64,000 nt of DNA from assembly GCF_006345805.1 (NCBI RefSeq), contig NC_043000.1:124062001-124126000 (forward strand), in the 5' to 3' direction. A program made the translations under genes and the position numbers. The stretch comes from Octopus sinensis. Lineage: Eukaryota. The notes under the pieces are model-generated. The model saw only the letters and a list, made by a program, of their open reading frames with translations. It was not told where the DNA came from and made no database searches. Positions 1-43,260 of this stretch are shown here, piece by piece (the first letter of the stretch is position 1; every line of letters begins with the position of its first letter).

Positions 1-1023
1 ATATCGTGTTGACTTTCCCCATGTTTACTTCTTGCGGTCAACGAAGGCACAAGTGAATGTATTTGTAATCCAAATTACATACACACAAAAATCTACCGCG
101 TTGTCAAAAACCACGTGACTTGAGAGGGTTTTCCCGCGATTTATTGTCAACATTGCACCTTAAACTTTTGTTGTTTTTTTTTCTTATGATGCTTTTCTTT
201 TATATACTGCAAATAATATTAAATTATTATATGTATAAGCAATTAATGCATTTGGGGATTCCGTCAGTGTTTTCGTTGGCTTGACAATGTGTTTGTTGTG
301 TTATATTTTTATTTCTTAAAATTACAAAGTTGTAAACAAGTTTTTCGAATAAAATGTTTTCAAGATCGACTAAGGGTTGTAGGTCAAGATCGACTAAGGG
401 TTGTAGGTGTATAAAGGAGAACCAATGCAAACTCACGAAAGAAAAAGTCACAGATCATTGTTTGCAAAGAATTTTAGCTCTTTATAATGCTATCCACCTG
501 TTAATGCAACGAGGTTAAGGGCGATCTTACGCTAGGTTAAGCATTAAGTATGGGTATTTAGATGAGTGTTAAAACCAAATCAACCGCAGAGGGAGCTATT
601 ACATGGTCGTTTGAACGGTTGGAAATATTTCAAAATTTCCCTCAAAGGACATTTTTCCGATCAAAATACAACAGACAATTGTGATCATATATCGATCACG
701 CTTGACCTGCTACGAAGCAAGAGAGCATCTCCACGCCTCGCTTGAAATAGCAGTCGAACATTATTATCACCATAAACGAGGGAGTCAAACGAGCTGCAAG
801 AATTAGAATCAAATCTCTTTCAATTCATATTCTACCGTCTTAAAAACGAAATGATACTTTGGATATTGTAATTCTAGCTAGGCTATGACGTGGGAAAATA
901 TGACGGTTAGATCTCAAACTCTTTTAATCCATTTTATCAAGGCTGAACTGGGGCAAAACAACGCAGCTAAGCAACATTAATTAATGTTATATATCTCGTT
1001 CTCATATGTAAGTGGCATTTACA

Positions 1024-4680: not shown

Positions 4681-5530
4681 TTTATATATAAAAGAAAGGT
4701 TGTGTGTCTGTCTACTCCGATTTAGATTCCTAACTACTCCCACATTTTGCGATGCAGTTTAACCAAAACCGGGTATCTTATAGTCGTGATTCATATCGAA
4801 CCCTTCTGGGTATTAGCGCGTGTCTACGATGAGTCTATGATTTTACAAATAATTTAGCATCATTTTTTTCCATTTTAATGCATATTTTTTTAATAAAGGG
4901 AAGTAACTCTCAAACTTCACACCAATATGCGTGCTCATATGCGACGTAATATCACATCAGCAGCATTTCCTCACACCCTCCTTGCACTTGGCGAAGGCAA
5001 AATACCAGGGGATGAAAATTACCAGGGTAATATTGCCACCGATTCCATTTGTAACATTGTTAAGACGCCTTCTGATCTCAGAGATGCAGTGTTCCCAGAT
5101 CTACAAGCTAATTATCAGAATATGGATTGGATTGGCAAAAAGGCTATACTGGCCCCGAGGAATAAAACTGTTCACTATATTAATGATGAAATGCTAAAAC
5201 TCATTCCTGGGGAAGTCTATGTATATCAGTCTATCGATACAACTCCTGACCCAGAGGACGTCATCAACTATCCAATAGAGGTACTCAATTCCTTTGAGCA
5301 CCCCAGACTACCACCACACTTTCTCAAACTTAAAGTTGGTGCCCCTATAATGCTCATCAGAAATTTGGTTCCCCCAAAACAATGCAATGGCACACGTTTG
5401 ATCGTTAAGTCCTTATCTCCCACCGTAAACTTATATCAATATTTGCCTGAATAATCATCATAATTCAGTGCAATCATTAACAGTACTTTCAAGCAATTCA
5501 GCCCCGAGCAACGCCGGGCAATTCTGCTAG
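4681..5530 (+). mobile_element. Helitron derivative carrying a PIF1-type RepHel helicase fragment (ORF 4927-5454)
   Basis: Motifs AILAPRN, LKVGAPIMLIRNL, CNGTRL; family A 5' end; hairpin+CTAG|T 3' end at 5530. Confidence 0.9.
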
Positions 5531-7579: not shown

Positions 7580-9010
7580 ATGATGGCAGCAAAGATAAGG
7601 ATTGGCAGTGATGTCACCAGACTTTTCTTTGGCAAAGAAGATGTATTAGCCTGGATTTGAAAGGTCAAAATTATGGCCAGGCTACAAGGCATTGAAGATG
7701 TAACGAGCCCCATGGCCCTGTATTTGGAGGGGAGTGCACTGCCACTGTACCTCGAAATGGATAAAGAAGAACAACTGAGCATGGCAAAGATCGAGCAGCA
7801 CTTGAGTGAGGCTTACACAGATGGAAAGTATCCTGCTTTTGCTAAGCTGGGAACGATCAAATGGAGAGGGGAACAGGTCAACGAATACGCTGTGGAGGTT
7901 CAGAGGCTGGTTTTGTTGTCTGGTCTTACCAGTGAGGGACTTGAGAAAGTAGTTCAACTGGCTTTTGTGAATGGCTTTCCCGACAATATGTCAGTGCAAC
8001 TACAACAGTTGTCAGGGGGCAACAAAATGGCAATGAGCGAGCTCATCATTCAAGCCTGTGTGTTGACACACAACACTAGGCAGAAGGCAGTAGTGATGGT
8101 GGCTGCAGAAGCCTGCAAATCTGCGCGATGACTGGTGAAGGACAAAAAGAGGCCTACTGTGGAATGACAGTGATCATTCACAGGCCGGTGTTTTAACTGC
8201 CAAGGACCGCACATGGTGAGGGACTGCGCAGAGCCTTGACCAGTTTGCTACCAGTGCAAACAGACTGGGCATATCGCCTCAAATTATAACCAGAGAAAAG
8301 GCCACAAGGGAAGTTGTTGCTTCTCAAATTTCCTCCGCAAATGAGTAGAGGTGTCGGTGAAGCCACTGCCCATAATTGAAATGTGGTCAGGGGAAACACA
8401 TTCAAGGCCCTAGTGGACATGGGCTGCATGACGACACTTGTAACCCTGAGGGTGACAAAGAAATAGAAGGGGATGAGTAGCGTCCAGGTGATCAATGGCA
8501 GTGAAATCAAATGCAAGGGTAGCAGTGTGAGGCACAACGCTAAGGCTTCAGGCGATCGTGATCAACCACATGATAGACGGGATTGATGTGGTAATGGGGA
8601 TGGACACAATCGACCACCTTGGAGATGTCAGTGTTGGAGGAGACGTGGTTTTGTTTGGTGCCATGGAGGCATTGTGCACTGTGAGTCAGGAATGTGAGTA
8701 AGAGCAGAGCCCTGTGAGGAGCTGCACTGCATATGCCATTGAAGACAAGGATTTTCGGGCAGCGTTTGATGCTCAGCGATGGACAATAAAGTGGCACTGG
8801 AAAGAAGGACTCCTGACACAGAAGAACAAGGTGAGCTGCTACCAGCATACTCTGAAAGGACATGCCAGGGGCAAGTTAGAAGAAGAGGTAGAGAAGTGGA
8901 TTAAGGAAGGTGTCCTTATCCCATTGAAGGAGGAGGTGGTGAGTGGAGTGCTACCTCTAATGGCAATGGTGCAGCCAACAAAGAGCAAAGTTAGACCGGT
9001 ATTCATGCAT
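7580..9010 (+). mobile_element. Degenerate Ty3/Gypsy-like LTR retrotransposon (gag, zinc knuckles, protease, start of RT)
   Basis: gag-like ORF 7673-8131; CxxCxxxxHxxxxC-like knuckles at about 8190-8290; protease-like FKALVDMGC at about 8400; GVLPLMAMVQPTKSKVRPV at the RT start; many stops and frameshifts. Confidence 0.8.
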
Positions 9011-15741: not shown

Positions 15742-15782
15742 ATGACTATGGCACGCAAAAAGAATAAGCAAGCTTACAAACC
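15742..15782 (+). CDS. U16-host gene coding exon 1 (MTMARKKNKQAYKP)
   Basis: ATG, 41 nt, then GTAAGT donor at 15783; phase 2 matches the next exon. Confidence 0.7.
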
Positions 15783-16586
15783 GTAAGTTGGTCGAAAATC
15801 GCGTAATTTTTCTACTTTATTTTACAACATGGTGGCCATACACCCAAAGTAGCACATGTCTCCTCATATTCTCTCTCTCTCACTCCCTTTTTAACTCTCG
15901 TCACTTTTATTCTTCGTTTCTCCTCCATATATCCAAAGTCCTATTTAAATAATTAGTTAAACTGAAGAGATCATCTTCGTTACTGAAAATTTAATTCTCA
16001 AACTAACACCATTCTTCAAATTTATTCTGTTAAGCTTTTTTTTGTTTTTTTATCTATTTCTCATAATTATTAATTTATAAGGAAATATTTATTCTTGCAC
16101 ATAAACGTTCTGAGTTCAAATTCCGCCGAGATCAACTTTAATCCTTTCGGATCGATGAAATATAGCACCAAAGTATTAGATTCAGTATAACCGACTGTTC
16201 CCTTGTCTCAAATTTAAGGGGCTTCTAAGAAAGTATTATAAATAGCTGCACTGAGGAATGTATTTTAAGTTCTAAGAAATTGTCACGTGTCAATATTACC
16301 AGACACTTTGGATTTTTGGAAGTTATTCATGTATTTCTTTCTTTATAATATATTTTTACTCATTTGAATAGACACCTAAGTCTCGTACGAGATGATTACG
16401 CTAGTACGTGTATGATAGTTTTCCCGTATAGAAAGTATTGATAAAACTTAGGTGAATACCCACTAAACGATCGAGACCGTATTACAATGACCGGTTTTGT
16501 GCTTTAACTCCATATGCTATCTTCTATCCCCAAATCCAATTCATTTAACTCGTCATAAGATTAAAAAAATTGTGAGAAGTCTTGAT

Positions 16587-16794
16587 ATATATATATATGA
16601 AAGAAAAAGGTGTTCAGAATGCTGGATGGTTGTAAAAATATATATTTATTTACATATCACATATTATTTCTTCATATAAGCGCTTTCAACTACTCCTGTA
16701 GCGCTAATATGTAGAAATAATATGGGATATGTAAATAAATATATATTTTTACAACCATCCAGCATTCTGAACACTATTTTCTTTCATATGTATC
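16587..16794. repeat. Foldback inverted repeat (about 95-bp arms, short loop) in intron 1
   Basis: ATATGAAAGAAAAAGGTGTTCAGAATGCTGGATGG... pairs with ...CCATCCAGCATTCTGAACACTATTTTCTTTCATAT. Confidence 0.9.
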
Positions 16795-17732
16795 AAATCT
16801 GTACATCACCCCTAATACTTCTAACATATATATATATATGGCAATCTTACGATCTATCTCTTGCTAGCTTTATATGAAATTCTACCTCTCGGAGCTAGAG
16901 CTTTTGTTCCAGTTCAGACTTCATTTCATTAGCTGTTCACTTTTTACACACAATTATTCTTTTTAGGTACTTGATGGCAAGTTTCAATCTTAGTAAAACC
17001 GATTATTTTGTCAGAACTTCGGGCTTTTTTGTTGCGGCAAATAAGACACTATGTTGGAATAATCTTAAATCTTTGAAGTTCGACCTTAGCACAATTTCTA
17101 ATAAATTTGAAATGCAAAATTCTATGTACTTGGAATTTAATCTTATGTAAACATAAATTAATACCAATAACTTTTAATACTGACAACTTTTAAAAAAAAT
17201 GAATGTCAACACATCTAATTTCCATATTGCCAAACAATCTTCCAATTCGTAACTTTTCTAGCCTACTTTTGCCACTTGATGTGTGTGTGTGCATTTAAAG
17301 GAACATATTTTCGAGAAAATTTTAATTATTTTCTCTGAAATTCTAGGCGAATGTAATTTTCTTTTTTTCAATTAATGTCAGACTGTTACACTGTTAAAGT
17401 GGTTGGCATCCAGCCATAGAAACTATGCCAATGCAGACATTGGAACTTGATACAATCTTCCTGCTTTTTGGATCTGGTTAAACCGTCCAACCCATGCCAG
17501 CATGGAAAACAGGCGTTAAATGATTATGATCAATCTCAATAGAAGAAATGTTATTAAAGAACAATTGCTCTTTCTAGAAAAGTGAAATAATAATGAAAGT
17601 AGTTAGGGTAAATCCTTCCTTATTTTATTCATTAACCATTTCTCTCAGTTAATTTGACCAGTCTATTTAAATGCATCCACTTTTTTGTTTCTCTAAGTCT
17701 TGTCTGATGCTAATATTTATTGTTATTTCTAG

Positions 17733-17796
17733 GCCAGCTGGTGGGGCCACTATCGCGCCTGCTCAAGTAAACAAAACAAAAGCTCCATTAGACAGT
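17733..17796 (+). CDS. U16-host gene coding exon 2 (PAGGATIAPAQVNKTKAPLDS)
   Basis: TTATTTCTAG acceptor, GTAAGT donor, 64 nt (phase 2 to 0), open frame. Confidence 0.8.
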
Positions 17797-18329
17797 GTAA
17801 GTATTGCATATGAGCTGATGAAATGCCTTGTCTAAGAAAAAGCATTCCATTTTTCAGCAAAATAGCATTATGAAGTCCATTTTAAGATGTCTCGACAAAC
17901 TGATTGAAGTAACTGAATTGAGATGGATGACTTGCAAGCATGTTGTTGAGTGATTGAACTAAAAAAATATTGCTTTGAAACATTTGCTTACCTGTAATAC
18001 CAATATCCGATCACTAGGATCTGTGTAGCTTGTGTTAACATAAATGATAAGACTTGGCCAGTTGTGTCATTGTTATTAGTTTACATAGATCAGTTGACAG
18101 TTATTGTTTGTATGGGCTTCCATAGATCTAGATCTATTTAAGATTTGGTCTATTCTTGACTATTGGTTCTTTGCCATTAAGAATTTCCATGAAAGCAATG
18201 GTGACAGAAACAAATTCTTCAACTGTATCTAATATGGAAGCTTAACTGAATTGCCTGTTTATGATTTCCAGCTGTTGCTCATTTGTTGGTTTGAAACCTT
18301 GTTAGATTGTGTCCAAAAGAAGACCATTT

Positions 18330-19426
18330 AACTGGGGTTTGGCCGAAAAGATCATAGGTTGACCAAGATACTCATAGAATGTGACCAAATGAGGTTTATT
18401 TTTCAACATAGTCCCCCTTGTGGTTTACACACTCCTTCAATTGGTGTTGCAGTGCTTGGATCCCATTGGTGAAAGAGCTTTCATCCTGTTGGATATTATG
18501 TTATCACCGATACTGGTTCCCAGTCTAGTGTTTTTTCATGTTGTGGGACATGATAGATGGTGTTAAATTGGGAGAATAAGGTGATAAACCAGTTCAAAGC
18601 TACAATTATGCACAGCAGTCCTGATGGTGTTGCCCTTTTGTAGATAAACACAATGCGTTTTGCATTTCAAAAATACTGAAGCCATCCCTTTCCCTGCAGA
18701 TGAAATGATGTTGGCTTTCTTTGGAGCAGGTGAGAAGGGATGTTTCCTTTGCATGGATTGTCTCTTTGTCTCTGGTTCAAAGTGATGAACCTAACCCTCA
18801 TCCTGGATTAGGAAATGTTCAAGGAACCCAGCTGGTTCTGCCTCAAACGATATCACATTTTCCGGTGATGTAATCAACTTGATGTGCTTTTGAACAGCTG
18901 TCAGATGTGGCACCCATTGAGCAGAAATGTTCATCATGCTAAGTTCATTGTGTAGAATATTCTCAACTCTCTCTCACAGGATATGCTTATAACTTTGGTT
19001 GTTTGATTTATAGTCAACTATTTGTCATCCATCACTATTTGGTGAACATGACCAATGTTTTCCTTCATGGTGGCAGTTGCAAGACGTCTAGATCTTGGGC
19101 CACCTTCAACACCCTCCCTTCTCCTAAATTCAGCTGTTCACTTTTGCACTGTTGATAAAGCTGGAGCATCATCCCCTAATGTAACAACCAAGTCAGCATG
19201 AAAGCCATTGGTGGCTAAACTCATTCTGCAGGTACTTGATAGCACCACAAGGTCAAATTCATTTTCAAGAGAAGTCACTACTGCTTACTTTCGAAGTCTT
19301 TGAACTGCCAGTTTACTTGGAAAGAAACAATGCAGTTATTAAGAAGAGCTGAAATTATGTGTGTGAGATTTCACAACTCTAGCATCACTCCTTCATAGCC
19401 TATGAACTTTTCAGCCCACCTTTGTA
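18330..19426 (-). mobile_element. Degenerate mariner element in intron 2
   Basis: Minus-strand HHFEPETKRQSMQRKHPFSPAPKKA...SAGKGMASVF; imperfect TIRs of about 27 bp (GGCCGAAAAGATCATAGG / CCTATGAACTTTTCAGCCC). Confidence 0.8.
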
Positions 19427-19930
19427 TTTATACTGTGTTTCATCTCCCACATTCCATGCTAAGAGTTTTGCACAGATCGTACTATGTAGGACTGTGCTAC
19501 AACTCTGGAATTTCTGCGGTTCCTCTTTCTCCCAGCAGCCATGTACAAATCCTCAAACTAAATATTGAAATACATCACTCTATGTAGACTTAAGTGTCTG
19601 CTCCCTCTTCATTTATCTAGCTCATTTTTAACAAGTAGAATAGAGAAATGTTACTGTGTTTCTTGTCATACTTTAAGCTTTAAAGATGTGTTATTGCATG
19701 ATTATTGATGTAACTAGTAATTATTAGTTATTCATGTTTGTTAACTCTAACTATTAACTTCTACTGTTCATCTGTTAACTAAAAATTTTAGAAGCTATTC
19801 CAGGATTGTACTGACTAGATTATTTTTTTCTCTGTATCATGTCCTTTTAGATGTAGCTTTTGGATCTTAGCTAAAATCTGTTTCATTATCTTTAGTGAAA
19901 TGTAAGTTTTGAAATGTTCTCTTCTTACAG

Positions 19931-20212
19931 AAAACAGAAGCATTCGTAGACAGTTTGTATAATGCAACATTTCAGAGGTATGACGCACGGCCAAATTCCA
20001 TGGAAGGTGTTTATATAGTACTTCGCTGGTATAAATTTAGTAAAACATGGATAACGCTGTATGTTGGTGAAGGAGATATCCGTTTAGAACTAAACCGCTT
20101 ATTTGGCCCCTGCAAGACATGCAAACCAATTACCAAATACTTGTCATCAGTTTCTAAGACCGATCGTAAGAGATTGCTTGCTCTGAAGTGGATTCCATAT
20201 CCTGATTTTAAG
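19931..20212 (+). CDS. U16-host gene coding exon 3, GIY-YIG-like core (GVYIVLRWYKFSKTWITLYVGEGDIR...)
   Basis: CTTCTTACAG acceptor, AAG|GTAATT donor, 282 nt phase 0-0, no stops, protein-like composition. Confidence 0.85.
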
Positions 20213-21414
20213 GTAATTTGTATTCCATTTATTATTGGGAAAATGTACATAGTCTGCTTTGAGGTCTTTAGGATTATTAGTTGTTTTTACAAACATTCTT
20301 TTCAAGCAAGTTGATTTTTACACAAATGTACATTTGCAATATATATATATCAATATCATTATCATTTAGCAATCCGTTTTCCAAGCTGGCATGGGTTAGA
20401 TGGGCTGACTGGGATGGGTAAGCCAGAGAGCTGTACAGGGCTCCAGTCTGATTTGGCTTGGTTTCTATAGCTGAATGCCCTTCCTAATGCCAACCGCTCT
20501 ATGTGTCACTGGCATTGGTCAGTGAAACTAATTTCACATGTCTTCTCATGTACAGTAAATGGCATGGCATAACTACAGATTTCTGCACCCCCCTGACTTT
20601 GGATGATCATAACAGAAAAATGGATATTTTTTAATGAAATTTTCTATGACTATGTGTTATATCATGTAGATTCTGAATATGCAAAATTTTTTTGGAGGAA
20701 GTGTTTTATGAGAGGGTGGGGAATTTCAGAAAATTCACTGGATATTTTTAAATGAAATTCTCTACAAATATACCTCAGACTATGTAGATTCTGAGGACAT
20801 AGGAATTTTGGGGGGAAACAATTGGGGGTTATTTTTGAGAACTATTCCCCACTCGGGTGTTTCCAAAGGGGTGGGGCAGAAATCTGTAGTTATGCCCAGT
20901 AAATCCCCAAAGATCTTAATCACTTGTCATTGTCCCGTGTCTTCTTGGGTCTACCTTTTCCACAGGTTTCCTCCACAGGATCGGCATGTTGAATCATGGA
21001 TGTTGGAAGATAGACACAACTATCAATTGACTATGTTATAAAACTATAACCCACTGGTTACCCACCTGTTGCTAAAGATTTTGTTGATTGGAAAACTTAA
21101 AAACTTACGACAGGTGTTGTCAGTGGGTTATTATTCTGCTGCTGCTCTTCAACCTTTCTGTACAGCTTGTCGTCACCTCCACCCCTGCTTCTTATCACCT
21201 TCCCCTCCATATTTACTATTGTCCTCATTTACAGTTCACTGCCTTCATCTCAAACCATTTCTTACAATTACCCCATGCTCTTGCAAACTCTACCTACCCA
21301 CCCTTCCTGATCTACTTCTACTTTCTCTTCTATTTACCTTCTTATACCTTGGTGTCACCATCTTTATTACCCTTTCCAGTTTCTCCCTAATTACTCCCAC
21401 CCACCTTTATATTA

Positions 21415-21795
21415 TGTAGCTGTGTGGTAAGTAGCTTGCTTACGAACCACATGGTTCCGGGTTCAGTCCCACTGCATGGCACCTTGGGCAAGTGTCTTCT
21501 ACAATAGCCTTGGGCCGACCAAAGCCTTGTGAGTGGATTTGGTAGATGGAAACTGAAAGAAGCCCGTTGTATGTATATATATATATATATATATGTTTGT
21601 GTTTGTCCCCCCCACCCAAACATCGCTTGACAACCAATGCTGGTGTGTTTATGTCCCCATAACTTAGCGGTTCAGCAAAAGACACCAATAGAATAAGTAC
21701 TAGACTTACAAAGAATAAGTCCTGGGGTTGATTTGCTTGACTAAAGGCGGCACTCCAGCATGGCCACAGTCACATGACTGAAACAAGTAAAAGAG
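21415..21795 (+). mobile_element. tRNA-derived SINE (long family)
   Basis: GCTGTGTGGTAAGTAGCTTGC...GGGTTCAGTCCC head, internal (TA)n, tail ...GACTGAAACAAGTAAAAGAG; related copies at 32213, 52837, 54152, 61800. Confidence 0.8.
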
Positions 21796-21904
21796 GGTAG
21801 CAATGTATCTCCTTTACAGCAAGAAACCATTTCCCATCCCTATATCCTACTTCAATCACTCAACATCTAGCATTATGCTGCCTCTCTTTTTACTATACTC
21901 CCAC

Positions 21905-22250
21905 CCAGTGAAGGCACATGGCTCAGTGGTTAGAGTATTTGGCTCACGATTGTAATGTTGCAAAGTTCAATTCTTGGCAGTGCGTTGTGGCTTTAAGCAA
22001 GACATTTTATTCCATGTTGTTCCAGTTCACTCAACCAGCAAAAATGAGTGGTACCTTTATTTCAAAGGGCCAGCCTTGTCACAGTTTGTATCATACTGAA
22101 TCTCCTCGGAAACTATGTTGAGGGTATGCCTGTTTGTGGAGTGCTTAGCCACTTGCTTGTTAATTTAATGAGCAAGCTGTTAACATTGATTGGATCAACT
22201 GGAACCCTCAATGTTGTTGCTGTCAGAGCACCAGTTGTGCTCTCACTCAG
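21905..22250 (+). mobile_element. tRNA-derived SINE (third family), degenerate
   Basis: A-box-like TGGCTCAGTGG and B-box-like AGTTCAATTC followed by a SINE-type body. Confidence 0.6.
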
Positions 22251-22526
22251 TTAAGGGGGTCTTTTTAATCTTGCTAGTTGTATGGCCATCTCACTAGTGC
22301 TGGCACCACAAGAAAAAAGCACCCAATACACTCTGTAAAACGGTTGTCATTAGGATGGGCATCCAGCCATAGAAACCATTTTAAAGCAGATAGTGGAGTT
22401 TGATGCAGTTCTCCAATTCATGGACCCTGTAGAAACTTTCAACCCATGCCAGCATGGAAGGCAGATGTTAAATGATGATGATGATATCCTGAAGTACAAA
22501 TCTAAGTGCTATAATGTATTGAATCA

Positions 22527-22740
22527 TCATCATCTTCATCGTTTAACGTCCGTTTTCCATGCTAGCATAGGTTGAACAGTTCAACTGGGGTCTGGGAAGC
22601 CAGGAGGCTGCACCAGGCTCCAGTCTGACCTGGCAGTGTTTCTACAGCTGGATGCCCTTCCTAACGCCAACCACTCCGTGAGTGTAGTGGGTGCTTTTTA
22701 CATGCCACTGACACAAGAGCCAGTCAAGGCAGCACTGGCA
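22527..22740 (-). mobile_element. RTE LINE 3' UTR fragment
   Basis: Reverse complement of the 3' end of the RTE at 41660-41825, including the (GAT)n tail. Confidence 0.85.
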
Positions 22741-23155
22741 TATTGTACTATTTCTGCTAAAGTTTGGACCATGTCAAGTGAAATAAGTAAAAATGCTATG
22801 CCATTCTTCAAATGAATTGATAGCAGCTGATGATGATCTTGTTCAGTGTTACTAAATCATTATTATCATTTAGTTATTGAAATTAGTGGCTCTGAGACAT
22901 GCACAGAATATTGTTATATCATCTGCTTAATGTTATCTAAAAGGCTCTATCCTAAAATGATCTCAATAAGTGGCTTCTACAGTGTTATCGATTCTAGGAA
23001 TTCAATATTTCCATTTTGAATTGTAATCAGAAAATATAATAATTTTTTACAATATTTTAGTTTTCTTATTTAATGTACTTACTGAATATATTATTAACAA
23101 AATGACAATTTATATGCTTAATAAATATGCTAACATGTATTTTTGTAATTTTTAG

Positions 23156-23233
23156 ACTACCATGAAAGACATCAGAACTGTCATTGCTGCAAAATATAAC
23201 GATGGTGGTGAACCGCCATTTAATTGCGTTTAG
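23156..23233 (+). CDS. U16-host gene coding exon 4 (TTMKDIRTVIAAKYNDGGEPPFNCV*); exon continues as UTR to a donor after 23276
   Basis: TTTTTAG acceptor with GCTAAC branch-like site; phase 0; TAG at 23231-23233; ATG|GTAAGT donor 43 nt later. Confidence 0.8.
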   Translation, partial: TTMKDIRTVIAAKYNDGGEPPFNCV

Positions 23234-24091
23234 CAAAACATACAGAAGGTTTTAGCCTGCTTGTATACAGAATATGGTAAGTTCTTTTCATCGATACTTT
23301 TTTTGCTACAATATTTCTAATTAAAAACGCACTATGTCTCTTAAAAGTTTATAGTGATTTTGTAAAACAAATATAACAATGTATTACAGTAGTACTTGGA
23401 ATGTAACTTGACAAAAAAAAAGCTAAAACTATAGTGATATATAAAGTCAATATATAATGTAATGTGTTTTTAGCCATTAGTCCCAAATACCCATTATATT
23501 TATGGCAAAAATACCCTAATTTCATTCAGTTTTCCCTTTTCCTTTAAACTCTGGTACTTATTCTATTTGTCTCTTTTGTTGAAATCACTAAATTATAAGA
23601 GCATAAACAAAGCAACACCAGCTGTTGAGCAGTGGTGGAAGTTACACAAAACTCAATGGGGCATGTGCCCAAACATGCAATGTATCAAATAGACTCAAAA
23701 GGCATTGTTTGGCCCAGAGTTATAATAGGAGAAAGACATGCAATGGGACTGAACTTGAAGCCATGTGGTTGCAAAGTGAGTCATACCTGCATTTTCATAG
23801 CAGTTAGTCCTTATTATCATATGGAACTCTTGAATTAGAAACAAAAGGGAATAGTCATTTGCTTTTGAATAAATCCCAAAGAAGATTATAATTGACTTCT
23901 GCAGAAAATATATAGAAACAAAAAGTGGGCAAGTAATATTTCATGCATGTGGCCCTCTCCCACTTGGAAATGGTATAATGTGGCCTCCAGTTGATGAAAA
24001 GTTGCCGATCCCTGCTCTACGTGAAGCTTAATTCTTTTCTCAACAACTGTAAAATGGATGTAAATTATAATTGATACTTTGTGTCATCAAC

Positions 24092-26929: not shown

Positions 26930-27157
26930 GTTGAGCTGGCAGACATGTTAGTGTGCCGGGCGAAATGCTCAGCAGTATTTCGTCTATCGTTACGTTCTGA
27001 GTTCAAATTCCGCCAAGGTTGACTTTGCCTTTTATCCTTTCGGGGTCGATAAATAAAGTACCAGTTTCGCATTGGGGTCGATGTAATTGACTTAATCCCT
27101 TTGTCTGTCCTTGTTTGTCCCCCCAGTGTTTAGCCCCTTGTGGGCAATAAGGAAATA
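26930..27157 (+). mobile_element. tRNA-derived SINE (short family)
   Basis: GAGCTGGCAGA...GAGTTCAAATTCC...GGGCAATAAGGAAA. Confidence 0.85.
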
Positions 27158-27586
27158 TATATAGGAATCAGTAAGAAACCTGAGGAAGTCCTTTTACAGC
27201 TACTATTTCATAGATTTGTCATCATCATAACTGTTGCAGTAGAGCATCATCGTTTCGTGAAAGTGTTAATAATGTCTTGAGTAATCTGGTGGCCAAACTG
27301 TACACCCGATTGGTTTTTCAGTGATGACAGTTATTTAATCTGAAGTTAGGTGTTTCTTGTAACTCAATCCAATAACTGCTTGATATTTTGATACAATTTA
27401 CTTAACTAAGGTTTTATGGATGGATATTGTTAACAACAGCAAATGGAGTAACTTTTGTTATCCATAGTGAGATTTTTGCTGATAGCTATGTTGCAATACA
27501 TCATAGAGTCGGAGTTAGTATTGTTACTCTGACAGCTTTGTTTTAATTACATTAATATGATACATGTTGTATGAAGATAATCAAAC

Positions 27587-27691
27587 TTGCAATGATGTGG
27601 TAATTTGCGTCTGATGGTGCAGTGTGCAGACAGTTGCCTGCTGTCAATAAATGCCTCTGGCTCTCATTGAAGAAAAGTTAAAACTGAGCAA
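27587..27691 (+). ncRNA. SNORD16: snoRNA U16 copy 4
   Basis: All boxes, guide and terminal stem intact. Confidence 0.92.
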
Positions 27692-28486
27692 GTTTATTTA
27701 CTCCTACCATCTTGTTGAAAATCTTCCAAATCAAAATCTCAGTCATGTAATGATTGAACTGAAAATAACTAAAAAATAGGTTTGTTTATTTAAATGCCTA
27801 TAGTGTATTTACGATTTTGAAAATTGGAATGCCAACCACTCTGATAGTGTAGTGGGTGCCATTTGCGTGACACTGGTATCTGCCACAACTGCGATTTTGC
27901 TCAGCTTGATGGGTCTTAGTAAAAAATCAATTGCAATTAGTGACATGGACATCATAAGCAAAAAAAAATAGTTTTCCCTTGACCTTTTTGTAGATTTTTA
28001 AAGTAAGATTTACAGGTAGTAAATTAATTTTTTCCTTTCAGAAACAACATAGTCAAGTATGCATAGAAGTTTTGATGAAAAGATAATTTCCAAAATAAAT
28101 TGCAAAAATTCAACAATATTCAGATCAATTTTAATAGTGGACATTACAAAATATGAATAAATGGTAAATGGATTAAAGTTTCTTTCTCCAGATTAGAGTT
28201 CATATCTTCCTTTGAATATAAATATGAGTGGTTCAATTCTGGTGGCATAGGACTGAGTGATAAATGTGCTTGCAGGTGAATTTATGTCACATAGGATGTT
28301 ATGACTTACACTGGTCACCATAATTATGTTCAGCAGAAGTAATGATAATTGTTTAGTTGCAAATGATGGTCTCCATATGGTTTTATTTTTCTCTTACTCT
28401 TTCTCACCAAAAGCAAGTCTGTTTAGTGTAACCATGATAACTGATGAGATACTGATGCCTGTGTTGTGTTTAAACCTGATGCTAAC

Positions 28487-28591
28487 TTGCAGTGATGTGG
28501 TAATTTGCGTCTGACGGTGCATTGTGCAGACAGTTGCCTGCTGTCAATAAATGCCTCTGGCTCTCATTGACGAAAAGTTAAAACTGAGCAA
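28487..28591 (+). ncRNA. SNORD16: snoRNA U16 copy 5
   Basis: All boxes intact; C' is TTGACGA. Confidence 0.92.
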
Positions 28592-29049
28592 GTTCATTTA
28601 CTCTTACTGTCTTGTTGAAAAATCTTCCAAGTCAAAACCTCAGTCCTGTAATGATTGAGCTGAAAATAACTAAAAAAAATAGGTTTGTTTATTTAAATGC
28701 CTATAGTGTATTTACTTCAGGTTAGATTATTTTGAAAACTGGAACGCCAACCACTTTGAGAGTGGGTGCCATTTGCTTGACGCTGGTATCTGCCACAACT
28801 GCGATTTTGCTCAGCTTGATGGGTCTTAGTAATAAAATTAATTGCAATTAGTGACATGGACATCATACAATAAAAAAAGGTTATCTCTTGACCTTTTTGT
28901 AGTTTTTTTTTTAGTAAAATTTTGCAGGTAAATATCCATATGGCTTTATTTTTTTCTTACTCTTTCTCACCAAAAGCAAGTCTGTTTAGTGTAACCATGA
29001 CAACTGATGAGATACTGATGCCTGTGTTGTGTTTAAACGTGATGCTAAC

Positions 29050-29154
29050 TTGCAGTGATGTGGTAATTTGCGTCTGACGGTGCAGTGTGCAGACAGTTGC
29101 CTGCTGTCAATAAATGCCTCTGGCTCTCATTGAAGAAAAGTTAAAACTGAGCAA
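29050..29154 (+). ncRNA. SNORD16: snoRNA U16 copy 6
   Basis: All boxes, guide and terminal stem intact. Confidence 0.92.
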
Positions 29155-29609
29155 GTTCATTTACTCTTACCGTCTTGTTGAAAAATCTTCCAAGTCAAAA
29201 CCTCAGTCCTGTAATGATTGAGCTGAAAATAACTAAAAAATAGGTTTGTTTATTTAAATGCCTATAGTGTATTTACTTGAGGTTAGATTATTTTGAGAGT
29301 GGGTGCCATTTGCGTGACACCGGCACAGGTGCCAATTTGCTTGACACTGGTATCTGCCACAACTACGATTTTACTCAGCTTGATGGGTCTTAGTAATAAA
29401 ATTAATTGCAATTAGTGACATGGACATCAAAATAAAAAAGGGTTATCCCTTGACCTTTTTGTAGTTTTTTTTAAAATTAAAATTTGCAGGTAAATATCCA
29501 TATGGTTTTATTTTTCTCTTACTCTTTCTCACCAAAAGCAAGTCTGTTTATTGTAACCATGACAACTGATTACATTGATGCCTGTGTTGTGTTTAAACTT
29601 GATGCTAAC

Positions 29610-29714
29610 TTGCAATGATGTGGTAATTTGCGTTTGATGGTGCAGTGTGCAGACAGTTGCCTGCTGTCAATAAATGCCACTGGCTCTCATTGAAGAAAAG
29701 TTAAAACTGAGCGA
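29610..29714 (+). ncRNA. SNORD16: snoRNA U16 copy 7 (D' CTGA changed to TTGA)
   Basis: Guide intact, D' altered, 3' stem GCGA. Confidence 0.88.
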
Positions 29715-30991
29715 GTTTATATAAATGCTTCTACTTAAACATGTTATGTGAATTTCAGGGTAACCTTTCAATACCAGTCACCTCATCCCAAATTTAACTG
29801 TTTGAAACTATTTGCATAATCTGATTTAAACTGTCATTGAAACTGAAAAATTGATTTTTTTAAATTTATGTAATATGGAAAGTTTATTCTTGTATTTTAA
29901 TAATTTGGGGTTTAGCCTGATGTACATAATATTGATATACCAAGTTGTAAGAAGTTATTACAAAGGCTTCTGGTTGTAAAACACTATCTCTAAAAGTTGT
30001 TCAACCTATACCAGTATGGAAAGCAAACAAAATTATCATGATACCTTACTGAACTCTGGTTTTATGTGGTGCAAGGGAATAAACAAAGTTGCATGATCTT
30101 TATTTACCATAACAGTAACCAGCAAAAGAAGGATTAAGCTTGAGTGTAGTTAAAGTTTTGCTGTTATTGTAGTTTTTTAATGAAACTAATACCAACTAGT
30201 TATAAATTGTAAAGTACAGCAAAATAAATGTGTAGCATAAAATATGATTAGATAAAACAAGGAATAAAAATTTTTATGGCAAAGAAATTGTCCAGGAAAG
30301 AAGAGATGTAATTTTATCATAATAGTCATCAGCAAAAGTAATTAGGTTTATGTGCTGGCAGAATAATGTATCTTGACTGGGATATTGTAGATGTGGTTAA
30401 AAGTACTGTTACTATTTGTAGTAAAACCTAAATTGTGATTTTAGTATGAAGGCCATCTATTCAGCTTATTAATAAACTAGCCTAAATAGGAGGATTTCAC
30501 AATGTTAAATAATCAGTTGTTTTCCAATGGCTTGTGCTTTTCTGATTTCTTTTTAACATATGTATGGTGACAATTATTTATCCTTGCCTCATACTTTGGT
30601 GTGATTTTATGATTCTGTTGTGTCAACACCCCCAGACGATGAAGTAGGCTAGCCCAACACGTAGATATAGAGGGAGAAGCCTAGACGTTGAGAGTTGAGT
30701 ACAGGTCATCCAAACATGCGATATAACAGTGGCAACGAGGATGAGATACTCACACAGCCACTGTGTAGTATTGCAATATAACAGTGCCAATGAGGATTTC
30801 ATAGCTCAGCCACTGTAGTATTGTGATATAACAGATTCTAAGATTTTATGACTGATTATTCTTGGAATATTGTAATGTTTCAGAGATATGTATCACAATA
30901 CTTAAAACCAGGATTAATATATCATTACTACAATAGCTTACCATTTAATTACATTTATATTTGTCTATGTAGTGCTTGAAGATGATCAAAC

Positions 30992-31096
30992 TTGCAATGA
31001 TGTGGTAATTTGCGTCTGATGGTGCAGTGTGCAGACAGTTGCCTGCTGTCAGTAAATGCTTCTGGCTCTCATTGAAGAAAAGTTAAAACTGAGCGA
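30992..31096 (+). ncRNA. SNORD16: snoRNA U16 copy 8
   Basis: All boxes and guide intact; 3' stem GCGA. Confidence 0.9.
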
Positions 31097-31592
31097 GTTT
31101 ATTCTTATGCTAAACATGAAATCATTAAATGTTATATAATCTTCAGGTCGAGTCTTTCTGCTAAGAAACACCCTTTGTCCCAAATTAACCACCTGTATTA
31201 TAATCTAAAATTTCATCCAAGCTCATATGTCATTGTATAAATAAGGGTCCAGAAGTTAAAACCTCCGGTTTTCTGCAATACCTTTGTATCTCAATCTCTA
31301 GAGCCTATTGTTTTTTCTGTTATTTAAAAAAAATTTATTGCCACACAAAAAGTTGATTTATTCATGTGAAAAATGTGTACAAATTCGTCAACGCTTTTGA
31401 CACTAACCCAAATGAGGTTGTTCTTGGTTCTATGATACAAACTTATAAAGTGATCTCAATTAAAACCTCAGAATTTCCTGTAACTTTGTTCCAGCATAAT
31501 AATTATAACAAAAGAGTTAAACATTTGATATTTTCATAAAGTCTAATATTTTTCATTGTTCATTGAAACTTTTTTTTTCTTCTTTATTACAG

Positions 31593-37390: not shown

Positions 37391-38980
37391 TTAAACAATG
37401 ATGATGATGACTTGCATTTATTGGCAAAATGAGTTTTCTTCTATTTGATCACAGAAATGTTTTTGTTCCCCAAAAGAAAGAACTTAAGTGCTGCTTGTCA
37501 CGAAGTCAAGCATATACAAAACCAGTGACTCATTTGGATTTACTGCAACATTAAGCAAATAAAAGCCCAATTTACCCTGTTGCTAGACAATAATAGCACC
37601 TCCCCAGAAAGCTTAGTGTTTGTTCTTCAGTTAGACTGAATCATATAATGTCTTGCCTAGAGAAATGAGGATATGTACACATTAGGATCTGAACACTAAC
37701 TTATATGTAACCTAATGCCTTTTCAATGCAGGAAATGAGTTAATTATTTAAGTTAAAAGGCTGAAATTAGGACAAAGGAAAGACTCATATTCAGAAAGAA
37801 TCTGTGTGCTGTCTAGTACAGTAAAAATGAACAAATTATTGGTAGCAAAAGGGGAGTGTCAAGGTGTTGTTGGGTGTCAAAACTGTAAAATTGGCAAAGA
37901 AAAATTTGTGGATGAGCTGAAGACTGTTCATTGTCATAGAGTATTTATCTATCAAGCACATAACTTGATTTATGTGGGAAGATAATGAGATTCGAGAATA
38001 TTCAGTACCCTCTTCCCACTGTTGAGTTTAAAATCATTACACGTTTAAAACAACCAAAGCTAGTTGGTTGTGACAATCAACCTGTTAATAAAATTTTCAA
38101 AAGGCTTACCTTCTCTCTATGTTTTAATACCTTTACAAAATGAACAGACATATTATTCTCTCATACTGACCACAGGAGAATTAATAACCCTGATCAAGAT
38201 TAAGCCAAAGTTTCTCTATTTACAGCCTTCTATGTATGAGTCAAAGCCTGGTATGTGAAAACATTACCTCCAACGAAAATAGCAATTACATCCCTCTTAG
38301 ATTATGCCCCACTCTCAAAAATGGAAGAACATATTGTTGACAAAAGTCAACCCTAATTAAAAGCATTGCAATTGTGATCAATCCATTGTTTTAAAAGTAT
38401 TTAGGATATGTCCTCTTTTTTTTAAAGATGTTATAATGTGGTTTGAAGGAAATGTTTAGTAGGTTTAGCGATTGTGTAGAGAATTACCTTGTTGAATCCA
38501 TGTTTATATTTTTTTAATGGTTTGGTCTAGAGGAAGGAGCTGTGCTTATTATCTTCACAGGCCCCACAAGACTGGTGAAATCAAAGCTGTTAATATTCCT
38601 CTTGAACAGTTGCAAGTTGACAGCTGCAGGAAAAGACACAAGCAAAAGTGAAATTCTAGAAGGCAGACATTCCAGAGTTAGAGTTAAAAAGACAAAAAGT
38701 GGAGGGTTATGATTACTATGGGGTCTGAGGTGGTGGTTTGAATTTAATTGACAAGAGGAGTTGTCTGAGTAAGGGTGGCATGTAACCCACCAGCACCAAG
38801 GAGTAATCCCACTGTAGTCTTTATCAGCACTGTTCTAATGATCACTTTTCCATGTTGCATAGGTCAAATAGAGTTTATTGAGGCATATTTTCTATGCCCA
38901 GATGTCCTTCTTGCCAGCAATCCTCACCTATTTCCAAGCAGGATAATATTTCCTCCATGGCCAGACATGTTGCTGCAGAA

Positions 38981-39432
38981 TCATTATCATCATTTAATGT
39001 CCGCTTTCCGTGCTAGCATGGGTTGGACGATTTGACTGAGGACTGGCAAACCAGATAGCTGTACCAGGCTCCAATCTGATCTGGCAGAGTTTCTACAGCT
39101 GGATGCCCTTCCTAACACCAACCACTCCGAGAGTGTAGTGGGTGCTTTTACGTGCCACCGGCATGAGGGCCAGTCAGGCAGTACTGGCAACAGCCACGTT
39201 CAAATGGTGTTTTTACATGCCAGCTGCTCGTAAGTTTTTTCACATGCAACCAGCACAAGTGCCAGTAAGGCGATGCTGGTAACGATCACGCTTGAATGGT
39301 GCTTTTTACATGCCACCGGCACGGAAGCCAGTTAGCTGCTCTGGCAATGATCACGCTCAGATGGTGCTCTTTGCACCCCGCCAGTCATCAAATTTAATTT
39401 CAATTTCACCTGCCTCAACAGGTCTTCGCAAG
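38981..39432 (-). mobile_element. RTE LINE 3' UTR fragment
   Basis: Reverse complement of the family 3' UTR (GTGGCACGTAAAAAGCAC units, GAT tail). Confidence 0.85.
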
Positions 39433-39527
39433 CAGGGTAATAAATGACACTGCTTGCATCACAGTGATAATCATTTACAACTATAATTCATGTAATGTCA
39501 AAACAAGAAGACAAACACACACACACA

Positions 39528-42779: not shown

Positions 42780-43260
42780 ATGTGTGTAATAGGTGTAAAA
42801 CAACTTCCTATGAACAAATATGAAAAAAAAAATTCGCGCACGCGAAAGGGGGGTGGGGGAGAGGCCTCGGAAAATTCACATCGGGAAGTTCCGAAAGCGT
42901 CTGAGGAGCTGACCCGGGCACCAAAACAAAAAAAAAATAGTGTAATATGTGTAAAACAACTTGCACTAAACGAATATGACAAAAAAAAATGCGCTCTCGC
43001 GAAAGAGGGGTGGGGGAGAGGCCTCGGAATATTTATATCGGGAATTTCCGAAAGCGTCTGAACCGGGCACAAAAACAAAAACAGCGTAATAGGTGTAAAA
43101 CAACTTGCTCTAAACGACTATCATGAAAAAAATGCGCGCTCGCGAAAGGGGGGTGGGGGAGAGGCTTCGGAAATTTCACATCTTCAGTCCACGGCCTTTA
43201 AACTAAGAAAAAATAGTGTAATTGGTGTAAAACTACTTGTTCTAAACGAGTATCAAGAAC
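42780..43260 (+). repeat. Minisatellite, about four units of 130-155 bp with G-runs
   Basis: GTAATAGGTGTAAAACAACTT...GCGAAAGGGGGGTGGGGGAGAGGC repeated. Confidence 0.8.

What the first reader, a model, noticed from the sequence alone, without database searches (positions are those of the whole stretch)
15742..23233. Unrecognised 154-aa protein with a GIY-YIG-like signature, possibly catalytically altered
Spliced product: MTMARKKNKQAYKPPAGGATIAPAQVNKTKAPLDSKTEAFVDSLYNATFQRYDARPNSMEGVYIVLRWYKFSKTWITLYVGEGDIRLELNRLFGPCKTCKPITKYLSSVSKTDRKRLLALKWIPYPDFKTTMKDIRTVIAAKYNDGGEPPFNCV. GVY-x15-YVG followed by GDIR and a terminal PPFN resemble the GIY-YIG motifs (two Tyr, helix-1 Arg, metal-binding Glu, terminal Asn). 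By eye the helix-1 catalytic Arg position holds Glu (IRLEL) and no Glu is evident in the last helix. It also has a CxxC insert and a basic N-terminus (possible NLS/NoLS). It does not look like SLX1, ANKLE1 or a Penelope endonuclease in size or context. It may be a domesticated or horizontally acquired nuclease fold repurposed for nucleic-acid binding.
Basis: inference. Interest (0 to 1): 0.75.

Follow-up and report, generated by a model that had tools for sequence, protein, structure and literature searches.

The report
Mollusc protein with degenerate GIY-YIG-like fold
This is a real four-exon octopus gene for a small basic protein, part of an unnamed family found at least across molluscs, whose predicted fold most resembles the GIY-YIG nuclease domain but which lacks that enzyme's key catalytic residues, so it is probably a non-cutting binding module.

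Summary
The 154-aa spliced product is really there: four exons, three GT..AG introns, an identical gene model in O. bimaculoides (98%) and Argonauta hians (77%), and dN/dS about 0.14. An exhaustive profile search found about 18 more clusters, including a bivalve and two gastropods. The gastropod gene has the same intron positions and phases, so the gene is old and vertically inherited.

No Pfam, NCBIfam, PHROGs or PDB sequence match exists. An AlphaFold model on 22 sequences is confident (pLDDT 86, pTM 0.83). Its best structural neighbour is a phage GIY-YIG protein (Foldseek prob 0.98, E 8e-3, TM 0.43/0.49), and ten of the top 40 viral hits are GIY-YIG-type endonucleases. PDB gave nothing significant.

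Across the family the first Tyr, the catalytic Arg and the His are not conserved. The CxxC is octopod-only. The invariant residues lie elsewhere: R55, P56, G61, W68, W75, G83, Y105, K121, W122, YN143-144 and FN151-152.

Best reading: a divergent, probably catalytically dead GIY-YIG-like domain used for binding. Function is untested. Octopods have also lost the family's C-terminal "FSIL" tail; a remnant sits out of frame after the stop.

The parts
15742..15782 (+). Coding exon 1 (M1 to the first two bases of codon 14). Encodes the Lys-rich N-terminus MTMARKKNKQAYK.
   Evidence: Donor CC|GTAAGT. The same exon is in L001 and L002, and the same intron position and phase is in Gigantopelta.
15783..17732 (+). 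Intron 1 (phase 2), GT..AG.
17733..17796 (+). Coding exon 2 (aa 14-35). An extended N-terminal segment carrying the family motif K-[LFP]-P-x-G. It is modelled with pLDDT about 77-80 without regular secondary structure.
17797..19930 (+). Intron 2 (phase 0). It contains a roughly 1.87-kb insertion (17860-19732) that is absent from O. bimaculoides, whose intron 2 is 252 nt. The insertion carries a mariner-like transposase remnant.
19931..20212 (+). Coding exon 3 (aa 36-129, 282 nt). Encodes the whole core: helix 35-46, hairpin beta1 60-69 / beta2 74-84 (GVY...YVG), helices 85-93, 101-108 and 111-117, and beta3 118-124 (K121, W122).
   Evidence: The exon is 282 nt in Argonauta, O. bimaculoides and Gigantopelta as well. 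81% nt identity to Argonauta.
20213..23155 (+). Intron 3 (phase 0), GT..AG. Contains an inverted pair of a roughly 180-bp dispersed repeat (about 22250-22730).
23156..23233 (+). Coding exon 4 (aa 130-154 plus TAG). Encodes the last helix 132-142 (D134) and the invariant KYN...PPFN motif.
23245..23268 (+). Out-of-frame remnant (-1 relative to the CDS) of the family's distal tail motif, reading E-G-F-S-L-L-V-Y. It lies 9 codons after FN, the same spacing as in relative P0021.
   Evidence: The frame differs in O. bimaculoides (1-nt indel, stop just upstream) and the remnant is degraded in Argonauta, so it is a relic rather than translated sequence.
23277..23282 (+). Consensus splice donor GTAAGT 44 nt after the stop, conserved in all three octopods. 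It is probably the ancestral exon-4 donor, now opening a 3'-UTR intron.
   Evidence: Gigantopelta's exon 4 ends right after ...NFSIL at a GT donor, and a fifth exon supplies GT+TAA. The position is not exactly equivalent, and RNA evidence is lacking.

Best explanation
The locus encodes a small (17.5 kDa), basic (pI 9.8) intracellular protein. It belongs to an unnamed family that is at least mollusc-wide (cephalopods, gastropods, a protobranch bivalve, plus unassigned transcript-like contigs).

The core (aa about 57-152) is predicted to fold as beta-beta-alpha-alpha-alpha-beta-alpha, preceded by an extra helix and an ordered N-terminal strap. This is the topology of the GIY-YIG nuclease domain. 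The model's nearest structural neighbours are phage and giant-virus GIY-YIG endonucleases.

The family keeps positions that in GIY-YIG proteins are mostly structural: G of GIY, mostly Tyr at the YIG position, F at the end of helix 1, and a terminal aromatic-Asn. It has lost the catalytic Arg and His of helix 1 and the first Tyr. A different set of residues is invariant instead: R55-P56, W68, W75, G83, Y105, S108, K121-W122.

I therefore think it is a degenerate, catalytically inactive descendant or look-alike of the GIY-YIG fold. It most likely acts by binding a polyanionic partner, probably nucleic acid, in the nucleus. Lys-rich termini would serve for localisation, and short linear motifs (N-terminal K-L-P-x-G; C-terminal [DE]-x-F-S-[IL]-L) for partner docking. 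Octopods have lost the C-terminal motif.

Shown: gene structure, selection, family, model confidence, structural neighbours, residue conservation. Inferred: homology to GIY-YIG, loss of catalysis, nucleic-acid binding, nuclear localisation.
For: Gene and selection:
- Real gene with canonical splice sites and dN/dS about 0.14.
- Family of about 20 clusters from an exhaustive HMMER scan. Named members are Solemya velum, Babylonia areolata and Gigantopelta aegis.
- Identical intron positions and phases in Gigantopelta.

Fold:
- AF2 on 22 sequences gives pLDDT 86.2 and pTM 0.83, with elements H35-46, E60-69, E74-84, H85-93, H101-108, H111-117, E118-124, H132-142.
- BFVD Foldseek rank 1 is 'GIY-YIG domain-containing protein' (E 8.4e-3, prob 0.98, TM 0.43/0.49, 128 columns). 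Ranks 6, 13, 17, 18, 19, 22, 25, 31 and 38 are GIY-YIG_SF, group-I-intron endonuclease, Endonuclease II or intron-associated endonucleases.
- The low-confidence 3-sequence model gives only noise, which serves as a baseline.
- In PDB, the low-rmsd long matches are PD-T4-3/CMoRE, which has an N-terminal GIY-YIG domain (PMC12923530).
- hhalign against a verified UvrC + I-TevI + SLX1 reference scores 19.6 (P 0.013), reached by 1 of 100 column shuffles. The register is GVY-GIY, YVG-YVG, helix 1. True pairs in the same setup score 19.5 (I-TevI vs SLX1) and 12.2 (SLX1 vs UvrC).

Residues and charge:
- Position 63 is F11/Y8/L3. Position 88 (Arg equivalent) is L/E/R/Q/K and others. Position 92 (His equivalent) is hydrophobic. 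D/E134 occurs in 11 of 12. N144 and N152 occur in 12 of 12.
- pI is 8.4-9.9 across members, with Lys-rich termini.
Against: - No sequence method links the family to GIY-YIG at significance. Pfam on all 22 members and on the consensus, NCBIfam, PHROGs, and a PDB profile search were all negative.
- Foldseek against PDB found nothing at E below 0.28. UvrC, I-TevI and SLX1 structures are not in the top 50.
- All TM-scores are below 0.5, and no BFVD hit reaches E <= 0.001.
- hhalign P-values are marginal, and the aligned block covers only the hairpin and helix 1.
- I could not inspect model coordinates, so whether the invariant residues cluster on one face is unknown.
- There are no expression, localisation or biochemical data.
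- An invariant R55/Y105/K121 set plus a mostly acidic 134 could in principle form a relocated active site.
Confidence: 0.45

Rival explanations
1. It is an orphan alpha/beta domain unrelated to GIY-YIG. The resemblance would be convergent topology plus a chance 'GxY...YxG' pattern in octopods, and the protein would do something else, for example act as a protein-protein adaptor through its conserved Trp/Tyr surface and terminal linear motifs.
For: All sequence-profile libraries are negative. PDB Foldseek has no significant hit and TM is at most 0.30. BFVD TM-scores are below 0.5. The GIY and YIG letters are not conserved family-wide, while the invariant residues are unrelated to GIY-YIG catalysis.
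Against: Foldseek gives prob 0.98 for the top hit. Ten GIY-YIG-type proteins among the top 40 viral hits is far more than the noise baseline. The hhalign register coincides with the structural expectation and exceeds 98-99% of shuffles. The terminal aromatic-Asn and the F closing helix 1 match GIY-YIG structural positions.
Confidence: 0.3
2. It is still an active nuclease or nucleotidyl hydrolase of the GIY-YIG fold, with a rearranged active site. The invariant R55, Y105 and K121, together with D/E134 and N144, would replace the canonical Tyr/Arg/His/Glu set.
For: Five catalytic-type residues are invariant or nearly so. Y79 is Tyr in 18 of 22 and an acidic residue sits near the start of the last helix in 11 of 12. 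GIY-YIG families tolerate motif shifts: CMoRE uses a 'GIYxY' Tyr, and motif E is absent in Slx1 (PMC1564403).
Against: The Arg of helix 1, mutated in the I-TevI R27A structure 1LN0 and described as catalytic and conserved in PMC12923530, has no conserved counterpart. Nothing shows that the invariant residues are spatially clustered. Nuclease pseudo-enzymes typically keep structural residues and lose catalytic ones, as seen here.
Confidence: 0.15
3. It is a PAZ-like small-RNA end-binding domain, as suggested by the only Pfam or PDB sequence hit (archaeal Argonaute PAZ_2).
For: Pfam PAZ_2 at E 0.031 over aa 41-117. P. furiosus Argonaute 1u04 at E 0.59 over aa 42-130.
Against: The hit is below Pfam's cut-off (14.6 vs 23 bits). 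It is seen only in the three near-identical octopod sequences and in none of the other 19 members. It is absent with the family profile and the consensus. No Argonaute or PAZ structure appears in either Foldseek list.
Confidence: 0.02
4. It is not a functional gene: a chance ORF chain, a pseudogene or a transposon fragment.
For: The window is rich in transposon debris. The C-terminus is truncated relative to the family.
Against: dN/dS is about 0.14 at dS about 0.9. Splice sites and phases are conserved from octopods to a gastropod. The gene is single-copy. Only exons are conserved against Argonauta. The stop position is shared by three octopod genomes.
Confidence: 0.02

Closest known systems
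Stand-alone phage / giant-virus GIY-YIG proteins and I-TevI-type 'intron-associated' endonuclease catalytic domains
   Same: They are the best structural neighbours of the model. They share a similar domain size (about 90-130 aa), the beta-hairpin followed by helix 1, the third strand, and a last helix ending in aromatic-Asn. The hhalign register matches I-TevI residues 4-41.
   Different: There is no detectable sequence homology by HMMER. The hairpin is about 5 residues longer and carries two invariant Trp. Equivalents of R27, H31 and Y6 are not conserved. The octopus protein has an extra N-terminal helix and strap, no NUMOD or DNA-binding tail, and sits in a spliced, vertically inherited animal gene.
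UvrC / Cho N-terminal GIY-YIG domain
   Same: Same proposed fold. hhalign gives score 18.0 (P 0.029) over the GIY-YIG-helix-1 block, and a permissive alignment puts the family's KYN on UvrC's 'PkYN'.
   Different: No catalytic Arg or Tyr. No UvrB-binding, EndoV or HhH domains. UvrC structures do not appear in the top 50 PDB Foldseek hits.
Eukaryotic GIY-YIG proteins: SLX1, ANKLE1/LEM-3, Penelope-like element endonuclease, plant MSH1 C-terminal domain
   Same: These are eukaryotic nuclear proteins built on the same fold class. A MutS-like GIY-YIG family exists (PMC1564403), and the octopod gene lies next to MSH6.
   Different: hhalign against SLX1 alone gives no signal (score 13.3; 19 of 100 shuffles reach it). 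There is no RING, LEM/ankyrin, RT or MutS domain, and the protein is 154 aa in all. The MSH6 adjacency is seen only in octopods and is 6-16 kb away, not a fusion. No other gene is called within 10 kb of the Gigantopelta gene.
PD-T4-3 / CMoRE GIY-YIG restriction endonuclease (9U75, 9U7U)
   Same: It is the only GIY-YIG entry among the top 50 PDB Foldseek hits. Its rmsd of 5-6 A over 83-97 columns is low for alignments of that length in the list. It is also an example of a shifted Tyr in the GIY box.
   Different: E is 1.3-1.6 and TM 0.23-0.30, so the match is not significant. CMoRE keeps the catalytic Arg and Glu and has a separate modification-sensing domain.

Membership tests
GIY-YIG nuclease superfamily | Sequence match to the family model (Pfam PF01541 or clan relatives) at or near the curated threshold. 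| tested here: not met
   No GIY-YIG-clan hit at E <= 10 for any of 22 members or for the family consensus. PHROGs, NCBIfam and a PDB profile search were negative.
GIY-YIG nuclease superfamily | Fold: beta1-beta2 hairpin, helix 1, helix 2, beta3 and a last helix forming a three-stranded sheet flanked by helices. | tested here: inconclusive
   The secondary-structure order of the pLDDT-86 model matches. The BFVD top hit is a GIY-YIG protein at prob 0.98, TM 0.43/0.49, with nine more GIY-YIG-type hits in the top 40. PDB has no significant hit and all TM-scores are below 0.5.
GIY-YIG nuclease superfamily | Tyr of the 'GIY' box (I-TevI Y6). | tested here: not met
   Position 63 is F in 11, Y in 8 and L in 3 of 22 members. 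Tyr is commoner one residue earlier, at position 62 (13 of 22).
GIY-YIG nuclease superfamily | Tyr of the 'YIG' box (I-TevI Y17). | tested here: inconclusive
   Position 79 is Y in 18 of 22, with F2, C1 and L1. The Gly of YIG is kept in only 11 of 22.
GIY-YIG nuclease superfamily | Catalytic Arg in helix 1 (I-TevI R27), and His/Tyr four residues later. | tested here: not met
   In the hhalign register, position 88 is L6/E5/R3/Q3/K2 and others, and position 92 is L/I/H/R/F. Neither is conserved. The Arg is described as catalytic and conserved in PMC12923530.
GIY-YIG nuclease superfamily | Metal-binding Glu in the helix after beta3 (I-TevI E75). | tested here: inconclusive
   D/E at position 134 occurs in 11 of 12 intact C-termini (A in P0021) near the start of helix 132-142. 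This part of the alignment has no confidence, so equivalence is unproven.
GIY-YIG nuclease superfamily | Terminal Asn (motif E, I-TevI N90). Not universal: it is absent in Slx1 and is Asp in COG1833 (PMC1564403). | tested here: inconclusive
   Y143-N144 and F151-N152 are invariant in 12 of 12. A permissive hhalign alignment places KYN on 'pkYN' at low confidence.
GIY-YIG nuclease superfamily | Metal-dependent phosphodiester cleavage. | not testable with these tools
   Needs recombinant protein and nuclease assays.
PAZ_2 (archaeal Argonaute PAZ, PF12212) | Match to the family model across the family. | tested here: not met
   14.6 bits against a cut-off of 23. Only the 3 octopod sequences of 22 match. 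No PAZ or Argonaute appears in the fold searches.
SLX1 / ANKLE1 / Penelope-like endonuclease | Accessory domains: C-terminal RING (SLX1), ankyrin + LEM (ANKLE1), or an upstream reverse transcriptase (PLE). | tested here: not met
   The protein is 154 aa with no further Pfam domain. hhalign against SLX1 is at noise level. The nearest RT ORF is an unrelated LINE fragment 16 kb downstream.

The most novel reading that the evidence does not exclude
This would be a previously undescribed animal family of stand-alone GIY-YIG pseudo-nucleases, old enough to predate the cephalopod-gastropod-bivalve split. The nuclease fold would have been converted into a nucleic-acid- or chromatin-binding module with a new invariant Trp/Tyr/Lys/Arg surface. 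Its C-terminal docking motif was discarded in octopods by a frameshift whose remnant is still legible in the 3' UTR.
Probability: 0.3. Interest if true: 0.55.

Novelty: new variant of a known kind. Interest (0 to 1): 0.42.

Why it matters
If the reading holds, it adds a lineage-restricted, non-catalytic branch to a nuclease superfamily otherwise known in animals from SLX1, ANKLE1 and retroelement endonucleases. It also gives a name and a testable hypothesis to a set of 'uncharacterized LOC' genes in mollusc genomes.

It is a clean example of a fold that only a deeper alignment made predictable: pLDDT 51 with 3 sequences against 86 with 22. Only a viral structure library linked that fold to a known class.

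It does not address a long-standing open question, and no phenotype or biochemical activity is attached to it yet.

Tried and rejected
- Pfam, NCBIfam and PHROGs scans of single members, all 22 members and the HMM consensus gave no family. The PAZ_2 hit was rejected as octopod-only chance.
- phmmer and profile searches of PDB sequences gave nothing.
- AF2 on the 3 octopod sequences gave pLDDT 51 and was unusable. Its Foldseek run gave noise and was used only as a baseline.
- Foldseek against PDB gave no significant hit.
The HGT question rests on the exhaustive HMMER search and the shared introns.
- The profile-seeded word-index search found few extra members.
- The GIY-YIG reference search returned almost only gamma-proteobacterial UvrC fragments. 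I-TevI, two UvrC domains and four SLX1 domains were therefore added from PDB alignments.
- MSH6 linkage as a functional clue: seen in the octopods, but no other gene is called within 10 kb in Gigantopelta. Treated as coincidence.
- Translation of the tail remnant by frameshifting or editing was rejected, because its frame differs between the two Octopus species and it is interrupted in O. bimaculoides.
- A literature search for the four LOC identifiers found no paper.

Full report

Yes. All four segments of the quoted 154-aa product are present on the + strand. The exact exons are 15742-15782, 17733-17796, 19931-20212 and 23156-23230, with stop TAG at 23231-23233. All three introns are GT..AG with good polypyrimidine tracts. 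Exon 1 ends CC|GTAAGT, and the third base of codon 14 comes from exon 2.

The protein matches NCBI 'uncharacterized protein LOC106880171' of Octopus bimaculoides at 98%, and an Argonauta hians protein at 77%. Both orthologous loci (L002, L001) have the same four coding exons with the same phases.

Nei-Gojobori dN/dS is 0.14 for window vs Argonauta at dS 0.96 (0.12 for aa 36-154, 0.22 for the N-terminal 35 aa), and 0.15 vs O. bimaculoides. Against Argonauta, only the exon 1 region and exon 3 align by blastn. Exons are 66-85% identical and introns 28-57%.

**2. A wider family.**

An exhaustive hmmsearch of 1.84 billion representative proteins with the octopod profile gave 19 hits at E <= 1e-3. 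Eighteen are true relatives of 93-202 aa; one is repeat junk. Named members are Solemya velum (bivalve), Babylonia areolata and Gigantopelta aegis (gastropods). The rest come from roughly 1-kb Logan, ENA or JGI contigs of unknown taxa.

Invariant positions in 22 sequences are P56, G61, G83, Y105, K121 and W122. Nearly invariant are R55, W68, W75, L78, F93, S108 and L117. In the 12 members with intact C-termini, Y143-N144 and F151-N152 are also invariant. All members are basic (pI 8.4-9.9) and many have Lys-rich ends.

The Gigantopelta gene has introns at the same three positions and phases, and the same 282-nt core exon. The gene was therefore inherited vertically from before the cephalopod-gastropod split. 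Nothing supports recent horizontal transfer or transposon domestication.

**3. Is it GIY-YIG-like?**

*Sequence libraries say no.* There is no GIY-YIG-clan hit for any member or for the family consensus in Pfam at E <= 10, and nothing in NCBIfam, PHROGs or PDB sequences. The only weak hit, PAZ_2/archaeal Argonaute, is confined to the three near-identical octopod sequences and is chance.

*Structure says probably yes, weakly.*
- AF2 with three sequences was unusable (pLDDT 51). With 22 sequences it is confident (pLDDT 86.2, pTM 0.83). The elements are H35-46, E60-69, E74-84, H85-93, H101-108, H111-117, E118-124 and H132-142.
- After the extra N-terminal helix, this is the beta-beta-alpha-alpha-beta-alpha order of the GIY-YIG domain. 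That topology is established knowledge from the I-TevI and UvrC structures; I did not compute a superposition here.
- Foldseek against PDB found nothing significant (best E 0.28, TM at most 0.30). The only GIY-YIG entries in the top 50 are the PD-T4-3/CMoRE chains at ranks 21, 28 and 34. That enzyme's N-domain is GIY-YIG (PMC12923530).
- Foldseek against BFVD put a phage 'GIY-YIG domain-containing protein' first (E 8.4e-3, prob 0.98, TM 0.43/0.49 over 128 columns). Nine further hits explicitly annotated as GIY-YIG-type fall in the top 40: GIY-YIG_SF, group I intron endonuclease, Endonuclease II and intron-associated endonucleases.
- The poor 3-sequence model, run as a baseline, gave such proteins only at ranks 16, 35, 36 and 43 with prob at most 0.07.

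The E. coli UvrC N-terminus matched database proteins at 100%. I-TevI matched 1MK0/1LN0, and two UvrC domains were read from the PDB alignments. Four SLX1 domains were read from PDB alignments.
- hhalign of the family core vs the first reference (UvrC fragments plus I-TevI): score 17.1, P 0.039; 5 of 200 column shuffles reach it.
- vs UvrC only: 18.0, P 0.029; 2 of 100 shuffles.
- vs the merged reference: 19.6, P 0.013; 1 of 100 shuffles.
- vs SLX1 only: noise.

In the same thin-alignment setup, true superfamily pairs score 34.4 (I-TevI vs UvrC), 19.5 (I-TevI vs SLX1) and 12.2 (SLX1 vs UvrC). The family's signal is thus within the range of true distant members, but it is not proof.

**4. Catalytic residues.**

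In that register, the first Tyr (position 63) is F11/Y8/L3. The second Tyr (position 79) is Y18/F2/C1/L1, and the Gly of YIG is kept in 11 of 22. The catalytic Arg position (88) is L/E/R/Q/K and others. The His position (92) is hydrophobic.

An acidic residue (D/E134) is present in 11 of 12 near the start of the last helix. Two aromatic-Asn pairs are invariant, and a permissive alignment places KYN on UvrC's 'PkYN' at low confidence.

The pattern of structural positions kept and catalytic ones lost, with new invariant Trp/Tyr/Lys/Arg, is what a pseudo-enzyme looks like. A relocated active site cannot be excluded, because I could not inspect coordinates.

**5. Mechanism proposed.**

I propose a small basic protein whose degenerate GIY-YIG-like core binds a polyanion, most likely nucleic acid, without cutting it. 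This is inference. The Lys-rich N-terminus (K5-K9) is a plausible nuclear signal. Residues 11-34 are modelled as an ordered strap (pLDDT 77-89) and carry the conserved K-[LFP]-P-x-G motif. Non-octopod members end with [DE]-x-F-S-[IL]-L, which looks like a docking motif.

Confidence:
- Real, selected gene: about 0.97.
- GIY-YIG-like fold: about 0.6.
- Non-catalytic, given that fold: about 0.7.
- Nucleic-acid binding: about 0.4.

**6. Octopod-specific truncation (new observation).**

Full-length relatives continue for 16-50 residues after ...PAFN. Gigantopelta's exon 4 ends just after ...NFSIL at a GT donor, and a fifth exon supplies the last codon and the stop.

In the window, the stop follows FNCV. 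The -1 frame downstream reads LRLAKHT-EGFSLLVY-RIW* (23224-23280; EGFSLLVY is 23245-23268). That puts F-S-L-L nine codons after FN, exactly as in the 165-aa relative P0021 (FN-TTPEKTNEP-FCVL). A consensus donor TG|GTAAGT (GT at 23277) follows immediately and is conserved in all three octopods.

O. bimaculoides has a 1-nt indel that changes the frame, plus a stop just before EGF. In Argonauta the remnant is degraded. It is therefore a relic of the ancestral exon end rather than a translated extension. How well it has survived in Octopus is somewhat surprising and unexplained.

**7. Context.**

Window position 1 corresponds to the 5' end of MSH6, which is transcribed divergently. It lies 6.4 kb upstream of the gene in both O. 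bimaculoides and Argonauta, and about 15.7 kb in the window, where the spacer is longer and carries transposon-derived ORFs. GIY-YIG domains fused to MutS-like proteins exist (PMC1564403). Here, though, the adjacency is only documented in octopods, and no other gene is called within 10 kb in Gigantopelta. I treat it as coincidence.

The rest of the window is transposon debris: a Pif1 2B-domain ORF, a LINE RT, and an IS1595/ISXO2-like DDE transposase with inverted subterminal repeats.

**8. Verdict.**

This is an unnamed, conserved molluscan protein family whose nearest known kind is the GIY-YIG fold. It fails the catalytic-residue and sequence-model tests for membership, so it is best filed as a new, probably inactive variant of a known kind rather than as a member. 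No paper mentions these loci. Interest is moderate. It is a tidy, testable orphan-family annotation with an interesting evolutionary footnote, not a surprise that changes a field.

Noticed in passing
window 23224-23282: Out-of-frame remnant of the family's C-terminal tail (EGFSLLVY, 23245-23268), followed by a conserved GTAAGT donor 44 nt after the stop. Octopods appear to have truncated the ORF by a frameshift and probably keep a 3'-UTR intron. The remnant is better preserved in Octopus than neutral decay since the Argonauta split would suggest.
   Followed up: partly
window 1-930, and upstream of the window: The window starts at the 5' end of MSH6 (PWWP + MutS I-V), which is transcribed divergently from the gene in O. 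bimaculoides and Argonauta. The spacer is 6.4 kb in both of those species and about 15.7 kb here, where it carries transposon-derived ORFs.
   Followed up: partly
window 17860-19732 (intron 2): A roughly 1.87-kb insertion absent from O. bimaculoides (intron 2 is 252 nt there, 2134 nt here). It is unique within the window and carries a short minus-strand ORF with a mariner-like transposase signature (...FEPETKRQSMQ...).
   Followed up: partly
window 4927-5454 (+) and 7673-8131 (+): A 175-aa ORF with a Pif1 helicase 2B domain (E 1.7e-14), probably a Helitron or Pif1-like element fragment. Also a 152-aa ORF with no Pfam hit that looks gag-like by eye. Both lie in the stretch between MSH6 and the gene that has no aligned counterpart in the O. 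bimaculoides locus.
   Followed up: partly
window 39495-41238 (+): Two consecutive ORFs (308 and 225 aa) of a non-LTR retrotransposon. The first has RVT_1 (E 1.4e-28). A 66-bp tandem array of 4.4 copies follows at 41398-41680.
   Followed up: partly
window 42766-45400: An IS1595/ISXO2-like DDE transposase ORF (43589-44308, minus strand, E 1.4e-13), bracketed by 136-157-bp tandem arrays (42766-43182, 44769-45125) that are inverted relative to each other. This looks like a DNA transposon with subterminal repeat arrays. Further hairpin-forming repeats lie at 45042-45400.
   Followed up: partly
window 22250-22730, 38980-39180, 52047-52233, 55386-55590, 57597-57792, 61467-61666: A roughly 180-bp dispersed repeat (SINE-like), present in at least seven copies in both orientations. 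An inverted pair sits inside intron 3 of the gene, and copies also occur in the O. bimaculoides and Argonauta loci.
   Followed up: no
window about 27150-31150: O. bimaculoides sequence maps to several overlapping places here, spaced about 560 bp apart. This indicates a long-period tandem or segmental repeat block that TRF (period limit 500) did not report.
   Followed up: no
window 48000-48093: ARAGORN calls a 94-nt 'tRNA-???' with a two-base anticodon. This is almost certainly a false positive or a tRNA-derived repeat.
   Followed up: no
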